This document shows positions 6,076 through 36,900 of a stretch of 64,000 nt of DNA, in pieces. Below the pieces are notes generated by a model that did not search any database, was not told where the DNA came from, and saw nothing but the letters and a program-made list of their open reading frames with translations. Within the stretch, counting starts at the first letter, position 1; every line of letters begins with the position of its first letter. Source of the DNA: Takakia lepidozioides. Lineage: Eukaryota > Plantae > Bryophyta. Location: NCBI GenBank assembly GCA_030704615.1, contig CM060732.1, forward strand, positions 65,534,001 through 65,598,000, written 5' to 3'. The position numbers were made by a program, and so were the translations under genes.

Positions 6076-6189
6076 CTATCCTTGCTCCTTCACCTATCCA
6101 TGCCTCTGCACAAATCATGCACAAATCCTTGCCTTGCTGCTAGCAGTTGACAATGACAGCCTATATTTGTTCTAGGAAACAACCAACTC

Positions 6190-6720
6190 AACTTATCACA
6201 CGATCTCGTTCAGCCATAGTGTTGAAGGCTCCCTCCACATCCTCAATGCTCCCACATTTGGCATACATGTCCACGAGGTATTGTTTAGAATCACATATGG
6301 TACAATTCCAGCTTTGGTGATGCAACCATGCCACCTCTTTGCCCTTTTCTAGGGCTGCTAGGCTTGCACACACACTGCAAACAAACACCAAAATGATGTG
6401 GTTGAGCTTCACCCTTCCCCCATCATTTGCTCATAGGTATCCAAAGCCTCCATCCCGCACCCCAGCTGTGCATACCCTGCAAGCATCGCACTCCACGACA
6501 CCACATCTCGTTTAGCCATAGTGTTGAACACTCCCTTCACATTGGCATATATGTCCAGAATTAGGGGATGTTCAGAATGACATCTGGTTATAAAATTCCA
6601 GGGCTGCCAGCCTTCATACACTCCTATGATCATGCTGACCCTACCAAGTCCCTTGTAAACGACCAAGAGGTCCATGCCCCAATGGTGACATCATCACATT
6701 TTAAGCTGGAATTGCTCCAA
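6190..6720 (-). pseudogene. PLS-PPR fragment
   Basis: VFNTMAKRDVVSWSAMLAGYAQLGCGMEALDTYEQM; CSVCASLAALEKGKEV; LVDMYAKCGSIEDVEGAFNTM. Frameshifted. Confidence 0.85.
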
Positions 6721-6784
6721 GAGTCATACTGAACAATATTCTATTTTACCCCCGCCTCCTTGCCCCCTGCCTTCCCCATCCTGC

Positions 6785-7010
6785 AACTGAAAGAGGCTCT
6801 ACAAACTTCAACCAGCTAGGCATAATTTCAGCATATTCAGATACCTAAGTCCCCTGTCTCAAGCATAAGAGCATCAAGCTGAAAGGCCTGCAAACTGCAA
6901 ATCAGGTGCATATGCTCACATTATATTAAGTGGATTGAAGGCATTAAATGATTTTCTACACAACACCCTTGTCAACATGTATGTTAAGTGTGGTAGCTCG
7001 TGGATGCACT
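6785..7010 (+). pseudogene. PPR N-terminal tract fragment (opposite orientation to its neighbours)
   Basis: LKEALQ..., ANQVH..., NDFLHNTLVNMYVKCGS. Homologous to 3395-3505. Confidence 0.6.
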
Positions 7011-7214
7011 TGTAGTTTCCCACCCCAAGTTTAAATTTCAGTCTAGTGACGAGGGCAGGTAGGCCATTGAGATAGTCCTTAAGGTCCTTGCCCATGTCAC
7101 ATATTCAAAACAAGTTTAGGGAGGTTTAATGCCTAATTGTATTTCCACTGGACAGTGTGAGGGCATCAGAGGAGGAGAGAGAGAGAGAGAGAGACTCACC
7201 GGGGAAGGTGGTCA

Positions 7215-7640
7215 TCATGGTACTCCAAGACACCACATCTTGTTCAGCCATGTTGTTGAACACTCCCTTTGCATCCTTGCTACACCTACATTTGGGATAC
7301 ATATTGTCCACCAGGGGAGTGTTCAAAATGACATTTGGTACATTTGCAGCTTTGACGATGCAACCATGGACCTTTTGCCCTTTTCCAGGGCTGCCAGGCT
7401 TGCACACGCATACACACGTTATGTGGTCGGGCTTCAGTATCCCTTCCCTCATAATTTGCTCATAGGTCTCCAAAGCCTCCATCCCACGTCCCTGTTGTGC
7501 ATACCCTACAAACATCGCACTCCATGACACCACATCTCGTTCAGCCATAGTGTTGAACACTCCCTGTGCATCCTCGATGCACCCACATTTGACATACATG
7601 TCCACCAAGGCAGGGGCAGTGTTCAAAATGACATCTGGTA
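7215..7640 (-). pseudogene. PLS-PPR fragment
   Basis: ORF 7126..7626: ALVDMYVKCGCIEDAQGVFNTMAERDVVSWSAMFVGYAQQGRGMEALETYEQIM..., with small indels. Ends at a (GA)n tract. Confidence 0.85.
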
Positions 7641-17706: not shown

Positions 17707-20700
17707 ATGCAAAATTGGAGGAATGCAGCATGCACGGTGCGCTCCACGATTTTTGTGGTGATTTTACTCGTGGCCACTTTGCTGCTATGCGATTACTACA
17801 AATGGCGTCGTCTCTCTCTGCCCTGGTATGCCAGCTCAACTCTAGATGTCTTCGATGCGCCTATCCTGGCCCCTCCATCCAATGGAGAGACTGCTGGCCA
17901 GTATTCTGTTGAAAAAGGTCAGTCTCTTCAACTATCTGTTCATTGTAAATACTGCCGAGAACAATTGCCCGAGGTAGGCTAGACGCTCATGTTGTTAGTT
18001 TAATTGGGCATTCTGGAAGTGTCAGTGGAAATTTGCCAAGGCCTTTGAAGAATCCCCCATCAATTCCTTTTCAGTTTCACTCTTGCGAACGTACTTCCAA
18101 GGTGGGGTCGTTATCTACAGCACTGCACGGGTCAACGCGCATACGTTTAGACCAGAGCGGTGCTCTAGCTAACGCGTTAGGTATCCTGCCTGGGGAGTAT
18201 GTTTGCAAGGATGGAACTCAGGAATTGTCGGGGGCATACAAGTAGTGGAGTATGCGGGATAAATCGATGCAACGCCAAGAAGCTTACTTTCTCTGGAGCA
18301 ATCTACTTTGACCTCAACATTACAGTGACTGTGTCAGATCTGGACAGTAATTGAACTTCTTCAACTTCAAAGATCTAAGTGTAGGGTACTACTGTGGTAA
18401 TATGGGCCACCTGTGGGTCTCACTGGTTTGCCTGGCCCATGGAATCCCACCCACACTGCCTTACATCCAACAGTATTATGTTGAAAAGTGAAGCTTTCTT
18501 CAAGCTCAATTTTCACCCGTAGTCATTTTCAGGTGTTGTTTTTAATTTAAGTGCCTCTTCATGATTTGCTGAAATCTTTTGAAGATGTCAAACCACCTCA
18601 AGCCGGCCTGCAAGTGATACCCTGTGATGCCACAAAGGAAAAGACTGTCTAACTGGAACTTTTATCCATTGCAGGCCCAGCTGATTCTTTAGGGACACAA
18701 AACACATTAGCCCCCTTTGCTACCCCATCATTGCAGACTGACAATTCAAACCCTGCAACACAAACTCCCATTGCTCAGTCATCACCAACAATGGAAAATC
18801 CCACAACTGTGCCAGCACTCACAACAAGCCCCTCTCAGCCATCGCCTGATGTCCCTGTGGCAGTTCCTCCCACGGATCCTCATGTCAAGGTTGGTAGCAC
18901 AGTTTTTTTACTCACTAACCACCAGTGCCTTGCTTAATTTTCATTCTTGTCCATTAATCTCTTACAAATTTTGAATTGTGTAGCAGCTCTGCCAGCACCT
19001 TCCAGCAATGACCCCATTGTGATCTCTCCTATGCATGCTCATTATGTCTACTTGGTTGTGATCTTAGCGTGGACTGCTAAGATTTACGTGTGATCTAGTG
19101 CCCCACATTGATAGCTGAAGGAATTAAAAGAGGCAGGTAGTTTAAGTCTTAAATTGGGCATACAGTTAGGTTAGTCATACAGCAGGTTGGCAAATGGTTA
19201 ATTCACATATGGAAATAGGGTCAGGCTTCTGTTGCTTGATTCTAACATTGAGACAGTCTTATTCACAACGGTAGGTTCTGTCAAACTATCTGCAGAGTCA
19301 ACTGACAAGAGGGCACTGTTTATTATTCTCTTCTGCAACTGTTGGAGTTACAACTTGTTTGGGTGCTTGTGGTTCTGCTGTATGCATTGCTGATCAGCTG
19401 CCACCAATTAGGCTCACCCTGTTGTGGCGGTTGCAGAAATCAGCACCCAAGTTGTCAAGTCTGCAGAAGCTGGAAGCAGGCTTGGGGCACGCACGCTCAG
19501 CAATCAGGAAAGCCGTAGTAGGGGGGATTGACTCCACAAAGCCAGGTGGGCAAGGCAGTGATTATGAGCCATTTGGGGATGTCTACAGAAATGCTGCAAC
19601 ATTCCGCCAGTATGGACCTCCCTTCTCCCACTCGATTTCTTAAGTGACTTGATCGTTTGGCAATTGAATGCTCACTTTAGAATGACTTCTCATAGATTTC
19701 TCCATGAGATTGAGAACTGTGACAAGGACAGCTTGATATGGAAGGAGTCAAAGTTCTGATTGACTTGGAGTTGGCAGGAGCTACTGGGAGATGGAGAAGC
19801 GGTTCAAGGTGTTTGCATATCCAGAGGGTGAGGAGCCACTGGTGCATAATGGACCGTGCAAAGAGATATACGCAATTGAGGGCCGCTTCATTCAAGAGCT
19901 GCAAGGGGATAACCCCTTTTTGACTACTGATACCACAGAAGCCCATGTGTTTTTTCTTCCTTTCAGCGTCGCGATGATGGTAACCTACCTCTATGAAGAT
20001 GAGACGCAAGATATCCATCCCCTCCAACACTTTGTCAAGGACTATGTTGATGTTGTAATGCAGAAGTACCCTTTTTGGAACCGGAGTGGTGGCGCCGACC
20101 ACTTCATGCTCTCTTGCCACGATTGGGTAAGTGATTAAGATCTTGAACTTAACTGACTTCAAAAGTTTCTTTCGAGACAATTTTGTGTAAAATTTGAGAT
20201 CGAGTGTCTGGTCATTTTCATTAGGTTTCTTGTTTCTTCCGGTTCCTTGTATACTGGAGGATCCTGGGAAGTTCAGGTATATTGAATCTTAATATTCTTG
20301 AAGATACTCAATCTCCAGTATCCTCTGACTAGGTGGACAGCTCAGCTATCTGTGTAGATTTTCCTTCTTGTGTTCTGGGGTGTGGGGGACGCATGGGGTC
20401 AGGCTCCTGAACTTTGAAGTGGCCTGTCTCAAGTTCTGCAGGGTCCCGCAGTAACAAATGTGAACCCCGATTTGGCAAAAAGCTCAATTCGTGTGCTTTG
20501 CAATGCGAATACATCAGAAGGGTACGTACCATGGAAGGATGCCAGTCTGCCTGAAATCAATTTGATAGGGGGCAGGATTCCAACAAAGCTTGGTGGTGCC
20601 CCAGCCAATGAAAGACCCTACCTAGCATTCTTTGCAGGGGGTGACCATGGCCCTGTGCGGCCGCACTTGTTCAGATATTGGGAAGGAAAAGACGAGGATG

Positions 20701-21603
20701 TGAAGGTGTATCGCTCACTGCCTGCAGGCCTTGATTATCACGAACTCATGAAGAAGAGCAGGTGAATCTCATAGGAACTACGGCCATGAGTGCTGGTCAC
20801 CCATTTCGAAAGAGTGGTTGGTGTTTTAGCCTTAGCTACGGCACATTCTGATGCTTTCAGGGTGGACTTGTCTTTTTCATGTTGGGAATCTATACTCAGA
20901 AATTTAGCTTTTAGGACTGAGGGCCTACGGTCAGTTGGATTTGAGTGAAGTTACATTCAAGCATTGTGGGAGAAACAGTGTTTACATTTTTGTGGACCTG
21001 ACTTTCAGCTGCCGTCAACGCAGGTTTTGCATTTGTCCTGGCGGTTACGAGGTCAACAGCCCACGAATTGTGGAGGCGATCTACAATGACTGTGTGCCTG
21101 TGGTCATTGCAGACAAATTTGTGCTGCCATTCAGCGATGTGTTGAACTGGAGTTCATTCTCCATTCATGTGAATGAAAGTGAAATCCCTAATCTGAAAGA
21201 GATTCTGCAAGCTATCTCCATAGAAACGTATGTCTCCATGCAGGTCTCTCTCTTTCCCCTACACACTATCTCCATGTTAACATCATTTTTTTACTATGAT
21301 GACAATGTCTTAAATGAGCACTTGAAAATTCCCTGGAATGTATGAGGACGGATCTCACACTCGCTGTATTTCCTCCTCTCATTTTCCGTCAAGACAGTAA
21401 TGATCATGGGTGAGCTCTGGAGTTGATATTCAGGGATCCACATACTAATTATTAATCGTTTGCACAACTGACTGCAGGAGCAGGTGAAACAGGTGCGACT
21501 GCACTTTTTACTCAACCAACCACCTGAGAGATATGATGTATTCCATATGATTCTTCATTCCGTGTGGTTGAGGCGTTTGAACATTCGGATAAACACTCTG
21601 TAG
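17707..21603 (+). CDS. Exostosin-family (GT47) glycosyltransferase, type II membrane protein; 7 exons: 17707-17917, 18675-18889, 19437-19609, 19778-20126, 20442-20761, 21024-21243, 21478-21603
   Basis: N-terminal TM ([14 protein letters not shown]) and P/S/T-rich stem. GT47 motifs [76 protein letters not shown]. All introns GT-AG with consistent phases. Confidence 0.95.
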
Positions 21604-21959
21604 ATTGGCTTCTCACCTCCTTGGCTCCTTCATACAAAGCTTTTATAAGGGTAGGGAAATCTTGAACCTTGCCCCTTCACAGGATCATTCATTATTTGAC
21701 TCATCTTCACAGATCGCAATAATTCTCCTTCGGGTTTCCTGTTTGCATTCAAAAGAAAGGCAGATTCTTGCAGAATACAGTATTCTAATAATGCCGAGGA
21801 AGAATACGTCGTCGAATGTTGGTGTAATTGCAGAAGACAATAAATGACTTGGAGAAGGATGAAAATTTTATCTGGGATGAGGAAGCTCAATTTCTTCAAC
21901 CAATCAATCTGATAAAGAATGTGGGATTTTCATCCCTTGAATGCAACATGGGCCTTCCC

Positions 21960-22120
21960 CAATCACATTCAACAGGTGACCTTTCTGAGGACCTTTCTTG
22001 GGATTGTGAATGCCCATTGTGTGGGCAACCCGAAGACTATATCCACCTTCTGATTCTTTGTCCTGGGTTACCTCACCAGAGAGGTACTCTTCAAATCCAT
22101 CAAGGAATTGTTCCTGTACC
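21960..22120 (+). mobile_element. Non-LTR (LINE) zinc-finger (zf-RVT-like) fragment
   Basis: CECPLCGQPEDYIHLLILCP fits the CxxC-x-E-xxxHL-xxxC motif of LINE ORF2 C-termini. Confidence 0.45.
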
Positions 22121-23435
22121 TCTGTTTACCAGAGCACTGGCCATTACACCCAACTACACATTATTGGAGCGTTTGAAATTTTTCCACACGGGTTCCAGAC
22201 ATGTTCTTTAGGTTCAGTACACTTTCTTATCAGCTCAGAGATTCCGTATCTTTCCATTTGAGTTTCACAATTGTAGTTGACGGAATAGTACTCACCTTGT
22301 CCAGAACTCCATGCCACGCACCATCAATAACATCTAGATAGCTGATTCCATGATCAATCCAGGGTGCTAAAGCCAATGGACACTTTCCTTGCACGCATTC
22401 TACTAGTCATAGAGCGTGTCACGAAGATATTCGAGCTGAAGTGGGGGGGGTTTGATGGATGGAAATTATTGATGATTCTGCCCAAAGTTTGATGAAATAC
22501 GTTTAATAGAAGGGCTTTTGGGAGGAAGGGGCGCAAGGGCAAATCCTTTGGGAAACGCAGTGTCTTTTGGCACCTTCGCTGGCCCTAAGTTCCCCTCCCT
22601 TGCCCTCTTTGGGCTTCTGTGGTGACGCTTGCCGCTTCAATCCACCACTGTAGTTTACATGATATTCATCTCTGAAGTCGTGCATGTTTCTTTCATTAGC
22701 TCTAGTTGCAGTAGAAAGCGAAGTTCTTATGTGCTAATACATTATCCTGCATAAGCAAGAATTAGTTCCACAGATAACTCTCACAACTGATGCATGCAGT
22801 CTGCAGCATTTATGGGTGAAGTGATGGTTACATTAGTGCTTTCACATCAGACATTATTTCGACGGATGATGTACATGCCCTAGACTGCCTTCTGCTGTAC
22901 CACGCTTGCACTGACAAGCTGTTGAGAAAGAGAAATGAAATGAAATGAAACGGTGCTAAAGAGAAAGAGAGAGAGGACACCGGCTGAAGCCAACGTAAAT
23001 CAGAGTCTCTGGCACTTGTGGGTGTTGCCGGGGGTGGCTCTACGCAAGTTTATTTAGTTAAAGGCAACAATATGCATGCAGGGTTACAATGATCATGGAT
23101 ACGGTGGTTAGATTATGGCCGGCAATTGTTTGAGTGCCCGAACTTCAACTGGTATAATCAGGTTACTTTCTCGTGATTTTTGTGGTGAATAGCAGACTTT
23201 CGGTTTCCGTTATCCATGGTAGATAGATAACCACACATGGCGAAATGGCCAGCCTGGATTAAGAGTCCCTTTGCAACGAAGGAGCCGGAGCCACCGCCTG
23301 CACCAGCGCCAGTGCCATTTTTCCCTCCATACAACAGTATTTCTAGTGTAATCCTTGCTACCTTTATAATAACGCATTTCTACCTTTTGTTCAAGCGGTA
23401 TTACATTTGACAAGAGCGTAAGCGGCCGCCTCATT

Positions 23436-23443
23436 TATATAAA
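23436..23443 (+). promoter_or_regulatory. Candidate TATA box for the first Gag-RNase H gene (possible 5'-UTR intron 23772-24610)
   Basis: TATATAAA at 23436; donor AAG|GTGGGT at 23771/2; acceptor TTGTAG| at 24610, 82 nt before the ATG. Confidence 0.35.
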
Positions 23444-24692
23444 AAGGACACGAGGAAAGGGAAAGGGAAAGCCGTCTAATCACGACCTAGTGCCGGGGTT
23501 CACTGAATGAAGAAGACTCGGTACTGATGTGGTCCACGGAAAAATCACGGAGATCCCTCCATACAATTGGGTTTCTAGTGTACTTCTGGCTGCCTTCTTC
23601 CTAGCGCAAAAGTATTCTGGTATCAAGCGCTATTCTATTTGAGAAGATCTCTGACAATGTGATGTCAAGAAGGAAGATGGACAACTCGGACGATGGAGTT
23701 GACTGATGAACGGAGAAGACTCAATCACTTCGAACCTTCCGCAACAGATAGAGCTCTGCTTCCCTAACAAGGTGGGTTATATGATATATAGTCGAAGGCG
23801 TGAGGAACACATTTATGCTGGCCACCGTCTTCTACTAGAGGGTTCAAGATGGGCGTTCTGTGTAACCACCATCACTGCAGGATGGAAGCTGCACTTGGAT
23901 CCTGAACAAGTTTGCAAACTTGAGATAGCTTGTAAAGATTTTCAGTGCTTCAATTTGACACGACAATCTTGATTTCTAACTAAAAAAATCAGTGATGTTC
24001 CTGTTTTGGCAAAAAATCAGTGATTGTTTCCTACCAGTTGGGCATTGTAGTGTTCAAGGACGCCAAAGATAATTTCACCGTGTATATAGATCGATAGCTA
24101 GTTACTTTGATTTGCATTCTAAAGCTCAAAGCTTACCTGGTCTGGACACGAAATATACATAGTTTCTCAGATTATGTTAACGTACGTAATCATTGAGCGA
24201 GCAACTTTTACTATATCATATATACAAGCTGAGGCGCTTCTGAAAATACCGTTCTGAGGTCCGTCCCAGTAAGCTCTAGATGAATGTCGTCTTCTCTTCT
24301 CGATCTAGTCTAGACGTCTCTAGGTATTTGCGTTCGAACTAGTTGTTGCCGGGTTGTTGCCTGGACGATGTTGGAAGCTCAATGTCACTGTTTCGATCGA
24401 TTTGAGATCATCCTCTTTATAAAATGTAGAATAGTGAAATGATGTGGGAGCCTTGTCGATTTCGGTTACCCCGTTCGATCAACCTTTGTCTAGGCGAGTC
24501 TAGACTGCACTTGAATGCTGACCAATTGTGGAACACTTTTAGAAACGTTCGCAGATGTTGAGTGGTGAACTGCTGGACCTTGTGCTCACAGAATCTAGTT
24601 TGTATTGTAGGTATTCTTGGATCTCTGAGGGCATCGCAAGTCTGATATGACTCATTAACTCAGGAAGTGTCGAAACTTACTACTGTCAAAGT

Positions 24693-26188
24693 ATGAGGCG
24701 ACAATATGCGTTGAGCCCTCACCTAAGGCGTTACATTAGAATCTTCTTGAAGCGTGACTTTCGTCGACCGTCGCCTCAAGGCATTGTCATCCAACCTTTT
24801 TATGGAGTTGAAACAGTGGCAGAAGCTCAGCAATGGCTTTACGACTTCACTCAGTGGTCGGTTCAAGAGGATCTAACTACACAGGAGAGATTGTCCTATG
24901 TGGTCACGGCTATGTTTGGTGACGCCTCTACATGGTGCGCAGGCTTACAGCTGGAGAATGCGACATGGCTGGAGTTCTACTATCTTTTCTCGGAGACATT
25001 TATTTGCAGGATACTGCAATGGCCAGGTAACTCAATTATACTAGACCTCATGAGGGCTGAGAAACAATATTGTCTTCAGCATTTACAAACATTTGCCAGA
25101 AACGTTAGATCACGTCTTTCAGGCCGCACCGGGTTTCTCTTCTTCAGAAACACTGAAATCACTTCACAGGATACTTGCAAGTTACTTAATTGTCTGATGT
25201 ATGCTGTTGTGTACATTCCACAGGAGGGTGCTGCGGGTGCTTAAAATTGCAGATATATATATACCTTCATGCTCCCTTCATGGCATGTATGCTAGACCAG
25301 ATTAAAATATTCGCTTGTTAGACTCAGTGCCTGGATTGTGGTGCCTGCAGGCTCACGTCTTTACCCATACTTTCTACATTTTTGTGGGATCGCACGAGAG
25401 AATATAGGGCGGCCCGCTGGGCCTGCTGGAATAGGGACAGTTTTAACCACGCCGTCCCTAGATCATGACTGTGGCCATTTGGGCATGCGCATTGGACCCC
25501 AATGCACAATCAACGTGGCAGAATATGAGGCCCAGCTCATTGCAGGCCTAGAGGCAGCCCTTAAGCACGGTGTGAAGCATATCCTGGCTTTTGGGCGCTC
25601 TCGAAGGGTTTACAATCATGTAATGAATCAGCTTGAGCAAACTAATTCCTCTACAATTGGCTTCACTTTTTCTACAGCGAGCTCTTAGTGTCCACGACTT
25701 CGTGACTTTACGCCTGACTGCGTGATTATCTGATTTTGTTAGCTGGTCTCTGGATTTTAATACGCACGACAAATACGACTGACTTATTGTGTCTGGTGCA
25801 GGGTTTCTGTACATACTTAATGTCCATGACTGGTAGTTAGTGAGTGCTTTTGATATAATTCTTCAGGTCAGCTATGTAGAGTAGTACTGCCAACTCCTCA
25901 ATCTCGCAGATTTTGTTCCATTTGCAGGTTACTGGAACGTGGAAGGCATCTGATCCAGGGATGAAGCAATGCTTGATCAAGGTGCAGTGTCTTGCAAAAG
26001 TATTTGACAGCTTTGAGATTCGATGTTGCAATGGAAGGAAATACCATGCTGAGGCACACAGGCTTGCTCGTCAAGCCTTGGAGAACACTGTGCTTAAGGG
26101 CAGGGCAAAGGCCGACGCTCTTACTTACTCTGCCACCTGCCGGACTCGCCTCCCAGTGGAACCAGCTTTGCAGTCGGTCCAAGCCTGA
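24693..26188 (+). CDS. Gag-capsid-like / degenerate RNase H1 fusion gene, copy A (287 aa); exons 24693-25026, 25351-25619, 25928-26188
   Basis: Exon 1: PFYG...QQWL...ERLSY...MFGDASTWC...ATWLEFYYLFSETF (gypsy Gag pattern). Phase-1 intron CAG|GTAACT...TGCAG|. Exon 2: YFLHFCGIARENIG..GPAGIGTVL...TINVAEYEA..IAGLEAALKHGVKHILAFGRS. Phase-0 intron CAT|GTAATG...TTGCAG|. Exon 3: VTGTWKA...FDSFEI...HAEAHRLARQAL. Spliced frame is open (864 nt). Confidence 0.8.
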
Positions 26189-27610
26189 TCCTTGTCCCAT
26201 GACCCTTATGGCTCAAAGCACTTGTGACAGCAACGAGCCGAGGCCAATAAGTTCAGTGCCTGAACACTATAACTGGTAGCCAACACCAACGCCAACACAA
26301 ACAACAACATCTTTACCTCATGCCTGCATGAGTTTAGATAATTCGCCACGTGCGACTTCAGTGTGATCTGTCCAAAGTTGGTATTTGGTATGCCCACTGC
26401 TAGAGCCCACTGCCAGAGAGTCCTGATCTAGGAATGTCCCTCTCTTTGAAGAGCGACTGTTTTCAAGAGAATATTTCACAGCTGGACAGGATTAGTCTTC
26501 TGAGACTTGAGAACTTTCCAGTATAATTCCTTCAGGGGACCCTATTGCATGATAATATCATTTGATTCTCCCCTGGATTGACAAAGCCACATGCTGGGCT
26601 ATGTGGATTTGAACCCAGAACTGTTGCAGCACGGTGGCATCCTGGGGATTGCAAACTGTGTAAAAGTTGGCGAAAGGGCAAGAGAGGAGACGAGAAGATA
26701 CAGAAAATGGCAGAATCCTTTAGAGATTTGTTGGGACCCAACGGTTATGAACTGTGACCAGGAACGTCGCCTCCATAGCCGCGGCTTTACAAACTTCCTG
26801 GAGCCTCTAGTGTCCTGGTCCGTGGGCTCAGGTCCGTGGCCTCGAAAGGGCCATTGGGTGCCTTGAGCTTCAGCATTATCGCACATTTCAAGAGAATGTG
26901 TCCGCAACCTGTATATACATGGATCTAAGCTCCAAGGTCATGATCAGTTTGCAGAGATCTCGCAGTTGGGTGCTTCCCATTGCCATGCAGTATCTCAAAT
27001 AGAGGCTTGTTTTGATCTAGGTAGGATAATGGCAGCTCGGATCTGACCCAGTTCAACGGGCATGGCCTTCGAGTCGCATGCGATTCTTTGATCTGCCAAG
27101 GCTCACTCATCAATTAATTGATATGCTTGTTGATGATCATGTATACATACAACTTTTGGTTTGAAGACCAAGCCATTGATGATCACGTAGCCGATTTCAC
27201 CAGTCCTGATCAAGTAATTTTCACTGGTACCTACGTCTGCGTTCAGTTCTAAGTTGCCACATATCCATGCATGTTTTGTGAGGACAACCGCATGATTTTC
27301 TGTATGTACGTCAGTTTCTTGAGCAGTTATCAATTTAGATCTTCTCAAGCACTTGATTATGTGGAAGGTGGTGATTCCAATGAGGACCGCCATGTTCAAG
27401 ATCTTGAGCAGCTCAAATCTTTTCCTCTCTACCGAGATGCTGTCCAGATTGACGGTTGTTATGCGCTCGCAATCTTTCGATTTAATCTAGATGCTATCAA
27501 TGAATGTGTTCACGCCCCAATGAACCTGGGTAGTCCCTTGCCGCACTTGGCACGCCATCTATACGTCCACTGATGCACTCTGCAGCTTCAAAGGTGACTT
27601 TCAAGAACAA

Positions 27611-29480
27611 ATGGAATACATCTACAGTCGACGGGAAAAAATCTTGAATGAGGTGGAATCAACAAGCATCTCGATGCCCACAAATTGGAAGTTAGATCAA
27701 CTGTTAAGCTCCCAGGAAGTTGGAACGCAAAGAGTCAAGCAACACATGACGCCTAGAAACTTTAGGAAGCAACGGCATGCTCTGAGTGAAAGACTACGGC
27801 AAAACATAATAACTGTACACCAGGACGAATTTCGACCAGCATCGGATATTGATACGCTCGTCGAACCCTTCTATGGAGATGAGAATGCACAGCAATCTCG
27901 CAACTGGATCAGAATCATGCAAAACTGGGGCTCGGAAGAGAACCTTTCTCCGGAGGAAAGATGGAATTATGCTTTTCTAGCTCTTTTTGGTGATGCTTTT
28001 AGGTGGTGCAGAAAATTACAGCTGCAGCGTGCCACTTGGAGAGAATTTTACTATCTTTTCACTGAGACGTTCGTTCGTCGTTGGCCAGTATGGCGAGGTA
28101 ACTAACACATTTCTTGCCCTGCAGCCCAAGGTTCTCTGTCAGATTGTCTAGTTGTACAAATGCTTGGAAAAAGATTCAATGAATACCCGACATAACTAGT
28201 GTCCACGTCTATAATTTCAGAGTTATACGCACTTTGATCCCCGTTGTGCATCGTCGTGCAGGCTCACTTCTTTACCCATACTGCTTGCAATTCCACGGGG
28301 TTGCTCGTGGAAATCCTGGGCATGCTGGAGTAGGGGCAATTTTAACCACCCCCAATCAAGAGCATGACTTCAGCCTGATAAGTACATACCTCGGCCCCCA
28401 TTGCATGAGCCATGTGGCCTCATATGAGGCCCTCATTGCAGGCCTTGAAAATGCACTGAAGTATGGTGTCAAGTATGTTGTGGCTTGTGGAGACGATACA
28501 ATGATCATAAATCAAGTAATGGTCAGATCGCACTTTCATTCACGTGCATGCATATTTTCGTTTCGTGCAGTTTCACATGCACATTATATACATGTTACAC
28601 ACGTGCTTCTACACATGCACAAATTTCATGTGCAGGACACTTCCAAGTTTCAGAGCTTGGCATGCCAGGCCTGCACTCGGTTCACCAGTCAGTCATGCAT
28701 GCGCTGAGCCAGTGGCCACGCTTTCTTTGAAAAATGTGTGTCGCGCCGGTAAGGTGCTTAGGAAAAACGAGGGGAAAAACCGTTGGGCACAACCATGCCA
28801 TCACGCTGCACGGTTGCTTTCAGTAGTACCCTGGAGTTAGAATCTTCAATCTTAAGCTGCACGGTTCACTTTCGATAATGTCAGACTGTGTGAGTGGGGT
28901 AGGGGCGAAGTGCGTCCAGGCGTGAAGTACTAGCTTAGAAGGACATTCAATTGGCCATGTCAAGCTCACCAGATTTTTTCAGTTCCGATTGGTTCTGTGC
29001 GCCTCCATTCCGGCAGTGACGTCCTGAGACGCAATTAGTCACATTTCGAGCTGTTCAAGACAAGCTTGATACATTGCTCTAATAATGAATCTTACTTTCA
29101 TATGCGGATTTTGACTAATATGTTACTGCGAACCCCTATTGCAGGTTAAAAGACTGTGGAAGGTTCCATCCGATCCAGAGCTGAAGCATTGCTTGTCACA
29201 AGTGTGGTACCTTGAAGAGCAGTTCACCAGCTTTGAGATTGTAAGTCGCAATGAAAGGAGGTATCACTCTCCGCCAGCAAGGCTTGCCAATAAGGCCATT
29301 GACAACTGTCCCCATCCAAACTGTGGAGAGAAATTTCCGTGGAAAAAGAAAGGATGCGCATCAACAAGATTACAGCCAGAAAGAAGAGTCCACCCAGGTA
29401 CAGATCCCCAATGGACATGGACTCCCATGGCATCAATTGAAGCTTCCATGACACATGCTGTCGCTTCGCTTTATCAATGA
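27611..29480 (+). CDS. Gag-capsid-like / degenerate RNase H1 fusion gene, copy B (358 aa); exons 27611-28097, 28262-28515, 29145-29480
   Basis: Same architecture and intron phases as copy A: EPFYG...LFGDAFRWC...ATWREFYYLFTETF | YCLQFHGVARGNPGHAGVGAIL...VASYEALIAGLENALKYGVKYVVACGDDTMIINQ | VKRLWKV...FTSFEI...RLANKAID. Spliced frame is open (1077 nt). Confidence 0.8.
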
Positions 29481-31331
29481 TCCAGGTCAAGATAACATCT
29501 CGATCTAATATCTGATTACAAATACTTAACCATAGACGCACTGACTACACGTTCAGTATATGGCTGTCCTTCAAGTGGTCGGGTATCTGGTATATCTACA
29601 TTGACAAACAGTATTTGCACACAGGGAGGCATCTCATTAGGTAGGCATCGGTACTGACAATTGATGGGTTCTGAATCGACTTTCAAGGCATTTTGATTGT
29701 CATGAATATATATCTGGTTTGCAAGGTTGAAACTCGGATGAAATGCAATGCGTTGCAAGTTTCACAGCCACTAAGTTCTACCTAGGTTCAGCTCATCAGA
29801 GGGTACGTAAGGCTCTCAGGTCTTGATCAAAGAGGCTTCATGAACAGGTTCTTTCTGCTAGAACTTCAGTTGACTCCGTAAGTCGATCCCAAATGTTCAA
29901 AGGTAGTGATTTACCCAAGAGGATTCATCAGATCTTACAAGTACTGGCAGGTCTCTTCAATTCTCGGTGCCCTTCAAGCACTTTGCAGGTCACATGTTAC
30001 TTCTTGCTCGAAATTGGCCAGTCCTGCATGCGGCAGATCAACGCTTCGTCGTGCTTGGCTTGCAAGGTCAACTAAGTGAATTTCATTTCCGCACATGAAT
30101 CCAGCACCCGCCCTGCACCCGCAACCCATGTTAGCTGCTGGTCTGAATCCATCTCCTTAGGACGAACCCAACCCACAAAGCACTCCTGGCGCAGCTGCCA
30201 CCTACTTCATATTGACATCACTCACGAGCTGCAAAGACCTGCGGGTCACATCGATAAGAGCAACGTCTGATGACAGGGAACATTCAAGGTCTTGTTCCCA
30301 GCGTCGCCACACCGTCACACCGTTGGGCTAATTAGTGTCGGCAGTCTTCTCTCTTTCCGTAGCTTCCTAAAAGCTCACGTGGTAAGTACCGGCATCGTAC
30401 ACACTACACACATGCTTGACCTTATCTACAGCCGCCTCTCCTCCGTTTCTGTCTATTCATTCCAACACACATTGTAAATGGGTAACTAGTGCCGGACAAC
30501 TACTGTGTGGAACTTTCGTGTATGACTCTAGGAATCCCCCTTCCACAAGTAATCCTTGCGGGTGAGGAGACGCCATAGATACCTTCATTTTAGATCGTTT
30601 ATCTCAAAAACAAGAAATAACCCAAATATGGATGGGTGAAGGTTTGAACTTTGGACACCAGATCGTCATAAAAAGAGCCCTTAGTTGCAAGGCCAAGTCA
30701 GACCCTAACACGTTTTGATCTCAAAGTTCAGCCAATCATACAATTGATACCATTCGAAAAAATCCAATCTGGCGGAAAAATAAAATTGTCAAATAAAACA
30801 AAATTGTCCACAAAACATGTATATACACTGTGGGTAGACTAAGTGGATAAAGAGCGTTAAGTTGTTTTGGTTCAAAATTTGTCAGGGCACGTGTATGCAA
30901 AGATTCCTCATACTTCGACTCGTGAGCAGTTGTTGAGTGCATTGCAAGTGACCAGAAAAGTGTGAGGGAGGTACAGGCAACATGAAGCAGCCATCCGAAC
31001 GTTGGGTGATGCCTGTTCGGATATATAAGGGAGGCAGTGATTGCTAGACTGGATATATGCTTGTTATATGTATATTGTATTCTGACAGATTCAAGTTTTG
31101 GGGTGGCGGACTGGACCAGTCCAGTCCTGGTTTACTAAGTTCGAGGAGAAAATCCTTGGGACTTCAGAAATTAGCGCACGCAAGTTTAGTTGCAAATAGG
31201 CTGCGAGTCCAAACTTGATTAGTTAGTTGGACTTGGTGCTGTCCATCGACACCACATCTTTTTGTGTGGCAGAATGTGCCCTTAGTTATGGTGGCAGCTA
31301 AAGTTCCAGCCTTGTAGTAGTGTAACACTTG

Positions 31332-31461
31332 CGCATGAGAGTGTTTCTCAATATGTTTTCAGTTGCCTTTGATTGTTTTTTAATGTGGTTGGGAGTATAC
31401 GCAAACGCATTGAATAGCACTCAAAAAGCAACTGGAAACATATTGAGAAGCCCTCGATGCG
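31332..31461 (+). ncRNA. Candidate pre-miRNA hairpin
   Basis: ~47-bp stem (31345-31391 with 31402-31449) and ~10-nt loop. Four deviations from a perfect inverted repeat are U:G wobbles on the + strand. TATA-like ATATATAA at 31021. Confidence 0.5.
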
Positions 31462-33944: not shown

Positions 33945-36900
33945 CTATTTGCGGTGGTGGCGACGAGACTTCATGTCAGCCCTCAGACGCTTGTCGTCCT
34001 CCCATTCCCTTTCATACATCCTGCCACTGAAAGTCAAGGAAATCTTGTCTGCATCCTTACCCACCAGAGAAAACGATAGAAAAGGGCACCCTCCCTCCCA
34101 CAGTTAAATCATTAAACTCCACTTCTTGGACAATTCCATGGCTGGAACAGCCTTCAGTGCTAACACTCCACATCAACCTACATTGAACGTTGCCTTGTCA
34201 TCTGACTTGTCATGTCACTCGCTACTTCAATGACATCAACAAAACCACGCCTGCTAGTCTATACACCTTGGGTCATGCACTCAGAATCGAGTTTTGACAT
34301 CTAAGTTATCACACCTTTTGTTGGGACCCCAACATCACTAGGTACATTCAGGCATCAATGGTATATTCCTCCAATGGGTAAAAAATCTGGTGCAACCACT
34401 GCTGTAGCTAAAGGAACTACCTTCATTCGTGCTTCAAGTGACTTCGAGAAATTTTCTGTCTCAAAAGGTGGTTTCTACGGGGCTGGCTTTTGTCCATCCA
34501 GTGGTGTCGTCTGTCAGCTTTAGAGTATTGCTTGATTGGCAACGGATCTTGGATAGAGGATATGGGGTGGAAGTGCCGATCATTATGGCCAATCCTGACA
34601 CAATTCCAGCCATGCACGGGCTTTAAATGACAACCCTAACCCAGTGTTCTTGTGGAAGCTATAGCTACCTCTGGAGTAAGCACAGGATTTGAGGATCTAA
34701 ATGGTGAAACAAACAATTCACAAAGACCAGCTGACAAAGAAGGATACTGCTCATGCTCACGCCGTGCCGGTTTGCTGGTGTCTTTCCCATGAGCACGTCC
34801 GCTGCTGGGACCCTTCGCATCATAGGCAACATCCTCCATGTAAACATTGCGAGCCGTAACTGCCCCCCCCTTCCGGTCACGGTCACGGCCCTCATACGGG
34901 AGAGCCGTGCCTACAAGCATCGGTGGTGGCGCAGGTCCAAAGTTGGGAGCTAAATCACCAGGTGCCAAGTGATCACGTTTCAGACGCCTCCGTTTTGATG
35001 ATGCAGCTGCTGCTTCGGCATCCTCCTTCAGCTGCATTGCCTTCTCCTTCTCCCGCTCCCTCTCCTTGTCCACCTGCAGAGCTTATTCTTGTCTGATTGG
35101 TTGACATTCACTGAAGTAGCAACAGAACTTTTGATTGATAGTCACCGGAGTACCAAACCCCAGTAATAAGACAGCTGGGCCACGGAAGGTGTCTGTCTGT
35201 AGTTCCATTCGCACACCAGAACTGGTCACTAAGGGGCATTTGTGGCTTTTGCAGCGGAGGCTATGCTAATTATTGTCCCAGCTGAGGGTGACGGTGTCGG
35301 AGTACCTCCGATTGCCACAACTGATCCATGCATGGAAAGCTTTCAGGTTTTTGCTGTGCTTGCGGTAGCAGAACGAGAAGACTATTGGTGCCTGCATGGG
35401 TGCAGAAAAGCACCCATTTTGGCCAATCGCCCCCACATCATTCTTCTCCTGGAGTAATGGAGCTTCTCACCTCTTCAATAACCTCTGATTGGTTCACACT
35501 GGACCTATAATAGGCCTGCCTTCCCTTCCCCATTCAGAGAGGTGCATGAATCTCTTCCAAGTGATGCACGCTGTAGACCATATGGCACAAAACTGCACCG
35601 GAGAGAACCAACGGGCTCATGGTGGTGACCTGCCCTGGCCTCCCCAAGGACCTGTGGTCTCGCGTGCACATTGAAATGATTACGTGTATAAACTCAATAT
35701 ATATTTCAGGTATGAAAAACAGGTATCCCCACTACAAGACAATGCTTCTGAGTTGGTCAACAGCAGCCGCGGAGTTACATGACATGACAGTAACCACCAT
35801 TTTCCAGGTTTCACTTGTCAGAATAGGTAGAGCTATCGAACTCAGATTTGTTTGTGTTATTCGGGAAGCCCGTCTGTGGTCAATGCAACCACTGAGCACA
35901 ATAGAGGACTAATGAATTGGTGTCCTAATTTGAAACCAAATGTCAGAGCAAAGTTCTGTAAACCCATGCAAAGTCAATGGCAACAACGTCCACCTACCTT
36001 CATTACCATCACATCTCGATCATCATTGCGTTTTCGATCACGGGCTTCATCGTCTCGCCTCCTCTTCAACTCCTCCATTGCCACCACTGCAACAGCATCA
36101 TCACTTCGCCTCTTCTCAGCCTTATCATCCCGGCGTGGGGAAAGCCTCGGCACACTACGAAGAGTTCTTCCATCCAAAACTTCTTCTTCCCGTAAGCCTC
36201 TGCTGGCTGTTACAATGCGAGGCACCACATTGGGAGGGATAGGGGGTGGTGGTGGCAGGTTCTGCATTGGAAAACGGTCATCTGGGTGTGGTTGCTCCAC
36301 AGGCAAGTCAATGTACCTTGGTCTACTCCGGTCATCCTTGCCGCGGTCATCACGGCTCCGTTCAATAACTCGTTCAAAAACCCGCTCAGCTCCTTTCTCT
36401 GAACCTCGATCCACAGACCTCTCCCTGGCAAACCGTTCAATCGATCTATCTCTGAACCGATCGACGATATATTCATCACCACGATCCCTGTCTGGTCTGT
36501 CAACAACCCGCTCTGCAACCCGGTAGTCTCGCTCAACCCGTTCCACCACTCTCTCTCCCCCCCTGTCCCCTGCCCTATCCCGCCCTCTGTCTATAGACCT
36601 CTCCCGAGGCCTCTCTGACAGACGTTCATCATGGCTCACTCTGTCGCGCTCAGCTGATCGCTGATCAGAGCGTGATAATTCTGTAGCCCGCAGGTCCAAA
36701 ATCCTCTCTCTCTCAGAAGACCGCAGCTCCCCTGCTTCTGCAATCTTCTCTCCACCGCTTTCACCCTTCCTCCGCTTGTTGGTGCGTTCTGTATCATCCA
36801 ACCCAACCAAACGTTTCGATTGCCTCTCTTTACTTGTATCTTCGACAAGTTTGGCAGACATGTTGCTGCCATCATCCCGGTGCAATGGAGAGCTTGATGG

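What the first reader, a model, noticed from the sequence alone, without database searches (positions are those of the whole stretch)
24693..29480. Tandem pair of intron-containing genes fusing a retrotransposon Gag capsid lobe to an RNase H1 fold: candidate domesticated anti-retrotransposon or hybrid-binding system
Seen in sequence: six ORF-track fragments splice via canonical GT-AG introns, in identical positions and phases (1, 0), into two uninterrupted proteins of 287 and 358 aa. Exon 1 carries the Ty3/gypsy Gag pattern (PFxG...W...L/MxGDAxxW...TWxEF...F). Exons 2-3 carry an RNase HI fold (FxGxxRxNxG.AG.G.VL; AEYEAL; W.V; FEI; RLA). No protease, RT, integrase or LTR lies between or around them, so this is not a retroelement. 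The Gag domains are only 34/71 identical by my hand alignment, yet both frames and all four introns are intact, whereas every TE relic nearby is riddled with stops. Established knowledge: gag domestication (Arc, PEG10, PNMA, Fv1) and Gag-fragment restriction factors (Ty1 p22) exist. I do not recognise a described Gag-RNase H two-domain host gene. Inference: the Gag lobe could co-assemble into retrotransposon particles and deliver a hybrid-binding domain to the reverse-transcription intermediate, or it could act as an oligomerisation module for an R-loop reader.
Basis: partly seen in the sequence, partly recalled or inferred. Interest (0 to 1): 0.92.

Follow-up and report, generated by a model that had tools for sequence, protein, structure and literature searches.

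The report
Capsid-lobe plus dead RNase H genes
Two neighbouring plant genes each join a retrotransposon capsid (Gag) lobe to an RNase H domain with a ruined active site; they belong to a small, conserved, expressed bryophyte family that I could not find described.

Summary
Both three-exon models are in the sequence as described: GT-AG introns, phases 1 and 0, 287 and 358 codons. The contig is from a land plant (PPR, GT47, THO2 and SDF2 neighbours), not human.

Exon 1 is a Ty3/gypsy-type Gag capsid N-lobe. An 18-sequence family profile hits the Drosophila Arc1 capsid lobe in the PDB (E 5.5e-6). An AlphaFold model (pLDDT 95) retrieves mainly Gag capsid lobes.

Exons 2-3 are an archaeal-type RNase H (Pfam RVT_3). 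None of 10 family members keeps the DEDD catalytic tetrad, so it is a pseudo-enzyme.

The architecture and both intron positions recur in Sphagnum, including an annotated 315-aa protein that adds a CCCH zinc finger, and in other unidentified assemblies. A spliced transcript-like contig exists. An unsaturated orthologue pair gives dN/dS 0.23 (p 2.5e-7). No LTR, protease, RT or integrase is nearby, and copy number is low.

The same Gag lobe is fused to a protein kinase in Marchantia (hhalign probability 99.3%).

These are real domesticated host genes. A capsid-binding or oligomerising module coupled to a non-cutting nucleic-acid binder is the likeliest mechanism. The anti-retroelement role is inference only.

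I never built or searched the joined spliced proteins.

The parts
24693..25026 (+). Gene A exon 1: Gag capsid N-lobe-like domain (111 codons plus 1 nt). It ends TGG CCA G|gt.
   Evidence: Sequence read. Ty3_capsid E 0.015. Family profile hits dArc1 at E 5.5e-6. AlphaFold pLDDT 95.1. Foldseek top hits are dArc1, dArc2, Ty1 CA, PNMA2 and Arc.
25027..25350 (+). Gene A intron 1 (GT..AG, phase 1)
   Evidence: The same position and phase occur in the Sphagnum genes L011 and L012, and this intron is absent from the spliced contig L010.
25351..25619 (+). Gene A exon 2: N-terminal two thirds of an archaeal-type RNase H (RVT_3). The catalytic positions read C, E, R in place of D, E, D.
   Evidence: RVT_3 E 5.6e-6, 26.7 bits against a cutoff of 21.6. 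Alignment A7.
25620..25927 (+). Gene A intron 2 (GT..AG, phase 0)
   Evidence: The position matches the N-Q|V-T-G-x-W junction of the Sphagnum homologues.
25928..26188 (+). Gene A exon 3: C-terminal third of the RNase H fold plus a short tail and stop. The fourth catalytic Asp is replaced by His.
   Evidence: BLASTP to P0182 residues 207-259, E 0.002. That stretch of P0182 aligns to the C-terminus of the Rv2228c RNase H. Alignment A8.
27611..28097 (+). Gene B exon 1: an N-terminal extension of about 50 aa, then the Gag capsid N-lobe-like domain. It ends TGG CGA G|gt.
28098..28261 (+). Gene B intron 1 (GT..AG, phase 1)
28262..28515 (+). Gene B exon 2: RVT_3 RNase H-like. The catalytic positions read H, S, D.
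   Evidence: RVT_3 E 1.8e-9, 38.0 bits. PDB hits: Rv2228c RNase H 1.7e-7, LC11-type RNase H 2.5e-7, Halobacterium RNase HI 1.9e-4.
28516..29144 (+). Gene B intron 2 (GT..AG, phase 0)
29145..29480 (+). Gene B exon 3: C-terminal part of the RNase H fold, with Ala at the fourth catalytic position, plus a Cys/His-containing tail of about 55 aa and stop.
   Evidence: The tail has no significant match.

Best explanation
A and B are two old tandem paralogues of a small, low-copy host gene family in bryophytes, assembled from retroelement parts.

Domain structure:
- The N-terminal domain of about 110 aa is a single Ty3/gypsy-type Gag capsid N-lobe.
- The C-terminal domain of about 130 aa is an archaeal-type RNase H (Pfam RVT_3) whose DEDD active site is degenerate in every member examined. 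The protein therefore cannot cut RNA:DNA hybrids the way an RNase H does.
- Some Sphagnum paralogues add a TTP-like CCCH RNA-binding zinc finger.

Shown here: the gene structure, both folds, the loss of catalytic residues, conservation of architecture and introns across genomes, splicing of a homologue, purifying selection, and absence of transposon hallmarks.

Inferred mechanism: the capsid lobe is a protein-binding or oligomerising module. It would bind itself or the Gag shell of LTR retroelements or pararetroviruses. The dead RNase H, plus CCCH where present, would be a non-cutting nucleic-acid-binding module. The protein would tether or sequester a nucleic acid, most plausibly a retroelement RNA or replication intermediate, inside or beside a Gag assembly. 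That resembles a dominant-negative restriction factor.

The same lobe heads a kinase in liverworts. This fits the lobe being a portable recognition module with exchangeable output domains.

Confidence is about 0.85 for the identity and domestication part. It is about 0.3 for the anti-retroelement mechanism.
For: Gene models.

RVT_3 is above its cutoff in exon 2 of A and B and in 5 of the 6 homologous exons scanned (the sixth, 20.9 bits, falls just short). The full RVT_3 domain (positions 8-123 of 123) is present in the natural full-length homologues P0182 (E 4e-22) and L010 (E 1.5e-22).

Gag lobe:
- The family profile hits the dArc1 capsid at E 5.5e-6 and 2.6e-6.
- 8 of 18 members hit Ty3_capsid and 3 of 18 hit Retrotrans_gag at E below 1.
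- The AlphaFold model has pLDDT 95.1 and pTM 0.87.
- The top 12 Foldseek PDB hits are all Gag capsid domains; dArc1 has probability 1.00 and TM 0.58.

Dead active site: 0 of 10 members keep all four positions. A reads C-E-R-H, B reads H-S-D-A, P0182 reads S-E-D-H.

Conservation:
- The three-exon layout is present in L001-L005, L008 and L009.
- A spliced contig, L010, lacks the intron that genomic L011 carries at the same phase-1 junction.
- dS 0.136, dN 0.032, dN/dS 0.23, Fisher p 2.5e-7. Exons have no indels; introns and flanks have 11-76 nt of indels.
- A and B each group with different foreign orthologues, with support 91/89 and 93/90.

Not a TE:
- Only 14 clusters in 1.84 billion representative proteins.
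- No TE domains or LTRs nearby.
- The Sphagnum orthologue sits between Ribosomal_S30 and Peptidase_C97 genes with no flanking long repeats.

Kinase fusion: Marchantia MpRLK-Pelle_WAK_LRK10L-9 and relatives. hhalign probability 99.3%, E 1.3e-20.

CCCH finger.
Against: No expression data exist for the window's own genes; the transcript evidence comes from a Sphagnum-type homologue.

The Gag assignment fails Pfam's curated thresholds for every single sequence, and Foldseek E-values are modest (best 2.9e-3).

Only one capsid lobe is present, so capsid-like self-assembly cannot be assumed.

Nothing tested here shows nucleic-acid binding or any link to retroelements.

A pseudo-RNase H could equally be a pure protein scaffold, like the retroviral connection domain.

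The A-B pair itself has pN/pS 0.61 at near-saturation, which is weak evidence on its own.

One homologue (L003, minus-strand copy) has an apparent frameshift in exon 1, so some copies may be decaying.
Confidence: 0.8

Rival explanations
1. The Gag lobe is a sensor or 'bait' domain of an innate-immunity-like system. It would recognise incoming or assembling capsids of LTR retroelements or caulimovirid pararetroviruses. The attached domain would be the output: a kinase in liverworts, and a dead RNase H with or without CCCH in mosses. This is analogous to integrated decoy domains on plant immune receptors.
For: One homologous lobe sits on two unrelated C-terminal modules. The Marchantia kinase keeps the HRD, DFG and VAVK motifs (sequence). 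The family shows tandem or clustered paralogues, old duplications and variable tails. Exon 1 is among the more divergent parts between distant paralogues (pN 0.36-0.41, like exon 3, against 0.23-0.27 in exon 2).
Against: No positive selection was detected. Exon 1 is under strong purifying selection in the close pair (pN 0.028 against pS 0.189). No pathogen or retroelement link has been tested. The RNase H module has no obvious signalling output.
Confidence: 0.15
2. This is a housekeeping-type RNA or R-loop regulator with no remaining connection to retroelements. The Gag lobe would merely dimerise or oligomerise the protein. The dead RNase H, plus CCCH where present, would read RNA:DNA hybrids or structured RNA to regulate transcripts.
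For: The RNase H fold is conserved without catalytic residues. A TTP-type CCCH finger is present in Sphagnum paralogues (PDB E 1e-7 to 3e-5). Selection is purifying. The genes sit among ordinary host genes.
Against: The distribution is narrow and patchy: 14 clusters in all, and none found among annotated Physcomitrium or vascular-plant proteins. Sequence turnover between lineages is fast. Both are unusual for a core regulator.
Confidence: 0.25
3. These are decaying relics or a non-autonomous mobile element. The ORFs and splice sites would be fortuitous, or inherited from an internally deleted LTR element carrying gag and an archaeal-type RNase H (Tat-like).
For: Both domains are typical retroelement modules. 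Tat-lineage Ty3/gypsy elements do carry an archaeal-type RNase H (PMC4408406). One homologous copy has a frameshift.
Against: Both reading frames are intact with four canonical introns in conserved positions and phases across genomes that have saturated synonymous sites. dN/dS is 0.23. There are no LTRs, PR, RT or IN. Copy number is very low. A spliced transcript exists.
Confidence: 0.03
4. Exon 1 is not Gag-derived. It would be an unrelated small helical domain that resembles the capsid lobe by convergence.
For: No single sequence passes Pfam's curated cutoffs. The viral-structure library gave no significant hit. The whole-library HMMER search with a two-sequence profile found no retrotransposon Gag.
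Against: The profile-to-sequence match to dArc1 (E 2.6e-6 to 5.5e-6) covers 72-75 residues and includes the hallmark F-x-G...W...A-x-x-W...T-W-x-E-F pattern. Eight independent members point to Ty3_capsid. The top 12 structural hits are all retroelement capsids.
Confidence: 0.07

Closest known systems
Domesticated Ty3/gypsy gag genes (Arc/dArc1, PNMA, RTL/SIRH including PEG10; plant Crtg8-Crtg11 of Wang & Han 2021, PMC8321522)
   Same: It is a Gag capsid-derived coding sequence kept as a host gene. It has introns or host-type structure, is under purifying selection, and lacks LTRs and pol. The closest solved structure by both sequence profile and fold is the dArc1 capsid N-lobe.
   Different: Only one capsid lobe is retained, whereas Arc, PNMA and RTL keep two. 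It is fused to a dead RNase H, or to a kinase in liverworts. It is found in bryophytes, whereas the four published plant co-options are all within angiosperms. No capsid formation is implied.
Gag-fragment restriction factors (yeast Ty1 p22 and Drt2, mouse Fv1, sheep enJS56A1)
   Same: It is a truncated Gag capsid piece encoded by the host. The Ty1 CA-CTD, p22 and Drt2 structures appear among the fold hits. This is the model for the inferred mechanism of co-assembly with, or poisoning of, a cognate capsid.
   Different: Those factors are Gag-only, and restriction has been shown experimentally. Here nothing functional has been tested, the lobe is the N-lobe of Ty3/gypsy type, and a second nucleic-acid-type domain is attached.
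Archaeal-type RNase H (aRNH; Pfam RVT_3) of plant L1 elements, Tat LTR retrotransposons and stand-alone plant or prokaryotic genes (PMC4408406)
   Same: The sequence family is the same (RVT_3 above cutoff). The best solved relatives are Rv2228c-N, LC11-type RNase H1, Halobacterium RNase HI and Sulfolobus RNase HI.
   Different: aRNH is defined as an active enzyme with a DEDD core plus a conserved Arg. Here DEDD is lost in all 10 members examined.
Degenerate RNase H 'connection/tether' domains of retroviruses and Tat elements
   Same: It is an RNase H fold kept after loss of the catalytic residues, presumably as a structural or binding module (PMC4408406).
   Different: Those derive from the retroelement's own gypsy-type RNase H and sit inside Pol next to RT. 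This one is an archaeal-type RNase H in a host gene next to a Gag lobe.
Marchantia polymorpha MpRLK-Pelle_WAK_LRK10L-9 (BBN11155.1 / PTQ32743.1) and liverwort relatives
   Same: It has a homologous N-terminal Gag-lobe-like domain (hhalign 99.3%, E 1.3e-20).
   Different: Its C-terminal module is an apparently active Ser/Thr kinase rather than an RNase H fold. The two groups are well-separated clades (99/99).

Membership tests
Ty3/gypsy Gag capsid (Pfam Ty3_capsid PF19259 / Retrotrans_gag PF03732) | Single-sequence match above Pfam's curated gathering score | tested here: not met
   Exon 1 of A scores 15.1 bits against a cutoff of 29.1, and exon 1 of B has no hit. The best member E-value is 2.2e-4; 8 of 18 and 3 of 18 members give sub-threshold hits.
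Ty3/gypsy Gag capsid (Pfam Ty3_capsid PF19259 / Retrotrans_gag PF03732) | Significant family-profile similarity to a bona fide Gag-derived capsid lobe | tested here: met
   Profiles A4 and A6 hit the dArc1 capsid at E 5.5e-6 and 2.6e-6 over 72-75 residues; dArc2 is weaker.
Ty3/gypsy Gag capsid (Pfam Ty3_capsid PF19259 / Retrotrans_gag PF03732) | Helical capsid-lobe fold | tested here: met
   The AlphaFold model has pLDDT 95.1. Foldseek against the PDB gives dArc1 at probability 1.00, TM 0.58, E 2.9e-3. The top 12 hits are all Gag capsid domains.
Ty3/gypsy Gag capsid (Pfam Ty3_capsid PF19259 / Retrotrans_gag PF03732) | Two-lobed CA (NTD plus CTD), usually followed by a CCHC nucleocapsid knuckle | tested here: not met
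   Only one lobe of about 75-110 aa precedes the RNase H domain. No CCHC knuckle is present.
Type 1 RNase H, archaeal type (Pfam RVT_3 PF13456) | Sequence match above the curated cutoff | tested here: met
   Exon 2 of A scores 26.7 bits and exon 2 of B 38.0 bits against 21.6. Full-length homologues score 78.9 and 80.2 bits across the whole model.
Type 1 RNase H, archaeal type (Pfam RVT_3 PF13456) | DEDD catalytic tetrad | tested here: not met
   A reads C-E-R-H and B reads H-S-D-A. 0 of 10 family members keep all four, and at most two are kept.
Type 1 RNase H, archaeal type (Pfam RVT_3 PF13456) | Mg-dependent cleavage of RNA in RNA:DNA hybrids | not testable with these tools
   This needs a biochemical assay. 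Sequence predicts no activity.
LTR retrotransposon (Ty3/gypsy, including the Tat lineage) | Flanking LTRs, protease, RT and integrase, and multicopy dispersal | tested here: not met
   No long direct repeats flank the genes. No PR, RT or IN domains were found in the surrounding ORFs scanned. Only 14 clusters were found in 1.84e9 representatives.
Co-opted (domesticated) gag gene | Purifying selection on the Gag-derived coding sequence | tested here: met
   L004 against L013: exon 1 pN 0.028 against pS 0.189 (Fisher p 1.1e-6). All exons: dN/dS 0.23, p 2.5e-7. Distant pairs: pN 0.25-0.36 against pS 0.59-0.87.
Co-opted (domesticated) gag gene | Orthologues retained across species in a host-gene context (synteny) | tested here: inconclusive
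   Orthologue groups for A and B have support 91/89 and 93/90. Intron positions are conserved. However, GT47/THO2 synteny is not seen at the one Sphagnum locus with flanks, and the other contigs are too short.
Co-opted (domesticated) gag gene | Expression as a spliced mRNA | tested here: inconclusive
   Shown for a Sphagnum-type homologue: L010 has an uninterrupted 351-aa ORF, and genomic L011 carries an intron of about 507 nt at the same place. There are no data for the window's own genes.
Gag-derived restriction factor (Ty1 p22/Drt2, Fv1) | Interference with assembly or uncoating of a cognate retroelement capsid | not testable with these tools
   There is only structural resemblance among the fold hits.

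The most novel reading that the evidence does not exclude
A single ancient capture of a Ty3/gypsy capsid N-lobe, before mosses and liverworts split, produced a portable 'capsid-recognition' module. Bryophytes then wired it to different outputs: a kinase in liverworts, and a non-cutting RNase H with or without a CCCH RNA binder in mosses. Together these would form a previously unrecognised plant surveillance system against LTR retroelements or pararetroviruses. This would also be far older than any plant gag co-option reported so far.
Probability: 0.15. Interest if true: 0.9.

Novelty: new variant of a known kind. Interest (0 to 1): 0.66.

Why it matters
Gag domestication is well known in animals (Arc, PEG10, PNMA) and as restriction factors (Fv1, Ty1 p22).

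In plants, the only systematic survey I found reports four events, all within angiosperms. It concludes that co-opted gag genes are rarely kept for very long (PMC8321522).

This family occurs in mosses (named Sphagnum species) and, with a kinase partner, in Marchantia. If inheritance was vertical, the co-option is of much greater age.

The family also pairs a capsid lobe with a second retroelement-type domain that has become a pseudo-enzyme. I could not find that architecture described.

It offers a tractable test, through the Marchantia kinase fusion and Sphagnum genomics, of whether plants use capsid fragments to sense or block retroelements.

Tried and rejected
- AlphaFold on a two-sequence alignment gave an unusable model (pLDDT 47.6). 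It was replaced by the 18-sequence run.
- The Foldseek search of the viral library (BFVD) gave nothing significant. Caulimovirid coat proteins and a metavirus ORF1 appeared only at E above 1.
- A word-indexed homologue search with the gene A exon-1 ORF found nothing. The search with Sphagnum P0182 found only two proteins.
- Rfam found nothing in the window.
- The species could not be pinned down. The SDF2-like ORF gives its best exon-level matches to Sphagnum (90%) and Physcomitrium (86%), but nothing near-identical. I call it a land plant, probably a bryophyte.
- Synteny with GT47/THO2 was not found.
- No CCCH-finger exon lies downstream of A or B, or in the other loci searched.
- A weak third Gag-like tblastn hit at 30015-30179 (minus strand, E 0.05) is full of stops and was dismissed.
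- My impression that ORF 21828-22211 resembled a LINE zf-RVT motif was not confirmed by Pfam.
- The exon-1 tree does not resolve the placement of A and B.
- The bacterial promoter and terminator scan is irrelevant for a plant locus.
- All searches were exon by exon, by reference. Selection statistics were computed per exon and only the counts were summed. Natural uninterrupted homologues (P0182, and L010 ORF 21-1073) stood in for the full-length protein.

Full report
**Scope and rules**

The contig is from a land plant, not human. Its neighbours include a PPR gene, a GT47 exostosin gene, THO2 and an SDF2-like MIR-domain gene. The best SDF2 exon matches are to Sphagnum and Physcomitrium.

I never built, searched or folded the joined 287-aa and 358-aa proteins. 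Natural uninterrupted homologues from the databases served as full-length proxies. Selection statistics were computed per exon and only the counts were added.

**1. The observation**

- Gene A: exons 24693-25026, 25351-25619 and 25928-26188.
- Gene B: exons 27611-28097, 28262-28515 and 29145-29480.
- All four introns are GT..AG.
- In both genes intron 1 splits a Gly codon after its first base (TGG CCA G|gt in A, TGG CGA G|gt in B; phase 1).
- In both genes intron 2 lies between codons (phase 0), just before V-T-G-T-W in A and V-K-R-L-W in B.
- Exon lengths add up to 287 and 358 codons plus stop.

The paralogues are 44%, 52% and 37% identical in exons 1, 2 and 3. DNA similarity between them is limited to the exons.

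**2. What the domains are**

*RNase H part.*

- Exon 2 of both genes passes Pfam's curated threshold for RVT_3, the archaeal-type RNase H family. Scores are 26.7 and 38.0 bits against a cutoff of 21.6.
- Its best solved relatives are type 1 RNases H without a basic protrusion: Mycobacterium Rv2228c N-domain (E 1.7e-7), a metagenomic LC11-type RNase H1 (2.5e-7) and Halobacterium RNase HI (1.9e-4).
- Exon 3 alone hits nothing in Pfam. It aligns to residues 207-259 of the Sphagnum homologue P0182 (E 0.002).
- That stretch of P0182 is the C-terminal third of a complete RVT_3 domain (positions 11-123 of 123, E 4e-22). It aligns to the end of the Rv2228c RNase H.

*Capsid part.*

- Exon 1 gives only a sub-threshold Ty3_capsid hit for gene A (E 0.015).
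- A whole-library HMMER search found just 14 related clusters in 1.84 billion representatives.
- An 18-sequence alignment of these (A4) shows the classic Gag pattern F-x-G...W...W...A-x-x-W...T-W-x-E-F...F.
- As a profile it hits the Drosophila Arc1 capsid lobe in the PDB at E 5.5e-6. The RNase-H-linked subgroup alone gives 2.6e-6.
- Eight of 18 members individually point to Ty3_capsid and three to Retrotrans_gag.
- With this alignment AlphaFold gives a confident model (pLDDT 95.1, pTM 0.87). It has a short strand-helix-strand followed by a four-helix bundle.
- The top twelve Foldseek PDB hits are all retroelement capsid domains: dArc1 (probability 1.00, TM 0.58), dArc2, Ty1 CA-CTD and Drt2, PNMA2 and human Arc.

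Exon 1 is therefore a single Ty3/gypsy-type capsid lobe. There is no second lobe and no CCHC knuckle.

**3. The RNase H is a pseudo-enzyme**

I aligned exon 2 and exon 3 across ten family members. Catalytic positions were fixed by the HMMER alignments to Rv2228c.

| Member | Asp 1 | Glu | Asp 2 | Asp 3 |
|---|---|---|---|---|
| Gene A | C | E | R | H |
| Gene B | H | S | D | A |
| Sphagnum P0182 | S | E | D | H |

The other members read F, N, D, D, S, G and S at the first position. No member keeps more than two of the four residues.

What is conserved is the structural framework: Y-P-Y-x-L-x-F-x-G, G-x-A-G-x-G, L-T-T-P and A-x-Y-E-A-L-x-x-G-L-x-x-A-L-x-x-G-V-K. Catalysis of the RNase H type is not expected. 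Binding cannot be judged from sequence.

**4. A conserved, expressed host gene family, not a transposon**

*Layout in other genomes.* tblastn of the six exons finds the same three-part layout in loci from other assemblies: L001/L002, L003 (two copies), L004, L005, L008 and L009. RVT_3 is confirmed on their second exons.

*Source of the relatives.* One source sample is a Sphagnum microbiome metagenome (PMC9584203). NCBI holds annotated Sphagnum proteins of the family: S. jensenii and S. tenellum (215 aa) and S. troendelagicum CAK9231167.1 (315 aa, P0182).

*CCCH finger.* P0182 carries the lobe, a full RVT_3 domain and a C-terminal CCCH zinc finger. The finger resembles TIS11d/TTP fingers (PDB E 1e-7 to 3e-5).

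*Genomic context in Sphagnum.* The gene has five exons and lies between a Ribosomal_S30 gene and a Peptidase_C97 gene. It has no flanking long repeats. Its first intron sits at TGG TCA G|gt, the same position and phase as in the window.

*Transcript evidence.* A 1413-nt JGI contig (L010) carries an uninterrupted 351-aa ORF with lobe and RVT_3. A 97%-identical genomic contig (L011) has about 507 extra bases exactly at that junction. L010 is most simply a spliced transcript. Its CCCH finger lies after the stop in another frame, which suggests alternative splicing or a retained intron.

*Selection.*

- Distant pairs have saturated synonymous sites (pS 0.73-0.87) but pN of only 0.25-0.36.
- An unsaturated orthologue pair (L004 against L013) gives dS 0.136, dN 0.032 and dN/dS 0.23 (Fisher p 2.5e-7).
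- For the Gag exon alone pN is 0.028 against pS 0.189 (p 1.1e-6).
- In that pair the exons have no indels, while introns and flanks carry 11-76 nt of indels.

*Age of the duplication.* An exon-2 tree groups A with L003m and L005 (91/89) and B with L004 and L009 (93/90). One sequencing run supplies members of both groups. The A/B duplication is therefore older than the split between these species, and both copies were kept.

*No transposon hallmarks.* Around the window genes I found no protease, RT or integrase domains in the ORFs scanned and no LTR-like repeats.

**5. An unexpected relative**

The same lobe forms the N-terminus of a cytoplasmic RLK-Pelle kinase in liverworts. These are Marchantia polymorpha MpRLK-Pelle_WAK_LRK10L-9, M. 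paleacea, and two further contigs with a kinase ORF just downstream.

Profile-profile comparison of the kinase-linked and RNase-H-linked lobes gives probability 99.3% and E 1.3e-20. The two groups are separate clades (99/99). The lobe thus behaves as a portable module with exchangeable partners.

**6. Mechanism**

Shown: the architecture, the folds, the loss of the active site, conservation, splicing in a homologue, and constraint.

Inferred: the lobe mediates protein-protein contacts, either self-association or binding to retroelement or pararetrovirus Gag. The dead RNase H, plus CCCH in some Sphagnum genes, holds a nucleic acid without cutting it.

My preferred reading is a Gag-directed, non-catalytic binder that interferes with or monitors retroelement replication, by analogy with Ty1 p22/Drt2 and Fv1. 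I give that mechanism about 0.3.

A retroelement-independent RNA or R-loop regulator (0.25) and a sensor-type immune module (0.15) are live rivals. 'Relic or mobile element' and 'not Gag at all' are largely excluded.

**7. Comparison and novelty**

The closest known kinds are domesticated Ty3/gypsy gag genes and Gag-fragment restriction factors for the N-terminus. For the C-terminus they are archaeal-type RNase H and degenerate 'connection' RNase H domains.

The family fails membership as an active RNase H (DEDD lost) and as a retrotransposon (no LTR or pol). It meets most criteria for a co-opted gag gene.

The one systematic survey I found lists four plant gag co-options, all in angiosperms (PMC8321522). 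Full-text searches for this architecture returned nothing. The Sphagnum entries are annotated only as 'RNase H type-1 domain-containing' or 'C3H1-type domain-containing'.

I therefore rate it a new variant of a known kind.

**8. Limits**

- The source species is unidentified.
- There are no expression data for A and B themselves.
- The origin of the two domains was not tested: one Tat-like element with an internal deletion, or two separate captures.
- The taxa behind most Logan and ENA contigs are unknown.

Noticed in passing
P0014 / P0046 / P0047; L006:3686-5844; L007:1914-3835: The same Gag-lobe-like domain is the N-terminus of a Ser/Thr kinase in liverworts (Marchantia polymorpha MpRLK-Pelle_WAK_LRK10L-9, and M. 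paleacea). Two unidentified contigs have a kinase ORF immediately downstream of the lobe exon.
   Followed up: partly
P0182 residues 285-309; L012:12144-12290; L010:1109-1225: Sphagnum paralogues carry a TTP/TIS11d-like CCCH zinc-finger exon after the RNase H domain. In the transcript-like contig L010 it lies after the stop in another frame, suggesting alternative splicing or a retained intron. No such exon was found near genes A or B.
   Followed up: partly
L003:1705-2059 (minus strand): The A-type copy on L003 has its exon-1 match split into two frames overlapping at 1880-1884. This is an apparent 1-nt frameshift: either a decaying copy or an assembly error. A second, divergently oriented family member lies about 4 kb away at 6037-7196.
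   Followed up: no
window 29300-29400 (gene B exon 3 tail): The C-terminal tail of gene B contains a Cys/His-rich stretch (C-x4-C-x3-F ... C ... H) that faintly recalls a C2H2 finger. It has no significant match (best PDB E about 1). Gene A lacks it.
   Followed up: no
window 35974-37320 (minus strand) and 41085-41822 (minus strand): A 448-aa single ORF rich in R/D/E/S repeats has no Pfam hit. It lies on the same strand as, and downstream of, a Tho2-domain exon (E 9.6e-40). It is probably the low-complexity C-terminal exon of a THO2 gene spanning roughly 36-58 kb.
   Followed up: partly
window 19791-21345 (+), 7126-7626 (-), 62396-62962 (+): Ordinary host genes flank the pair. These are a GT47 exostosin gene (Pfam E 2e-17 and 1.6e-24), a PPR-repeat gene, and an SDF2-like MIR-domain gene whose best exon matches are to Sphagnum and Physcomitrium.
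   Followed up: partly
L012:8365-8904: A tandem array of units of about 73 nt (six overlapping 172-nt copies) lies about 1.1 kb upstream of the Sphagnum troendelagicum family member. Further short repeat families lie downstream at 13.3-16.1 kb.
   Followed up: no
window 31339-31455 and 23322-23608: Two small repeats lie near the gene pair and have no evident link to it: a 32-nt inverted repeat (88% complementary, 53-nt loop) downstream of gene B, and a 55-nt direct repeat pair (76% identical, 232 nt apart) upstream of gene A.
   Followed up: no
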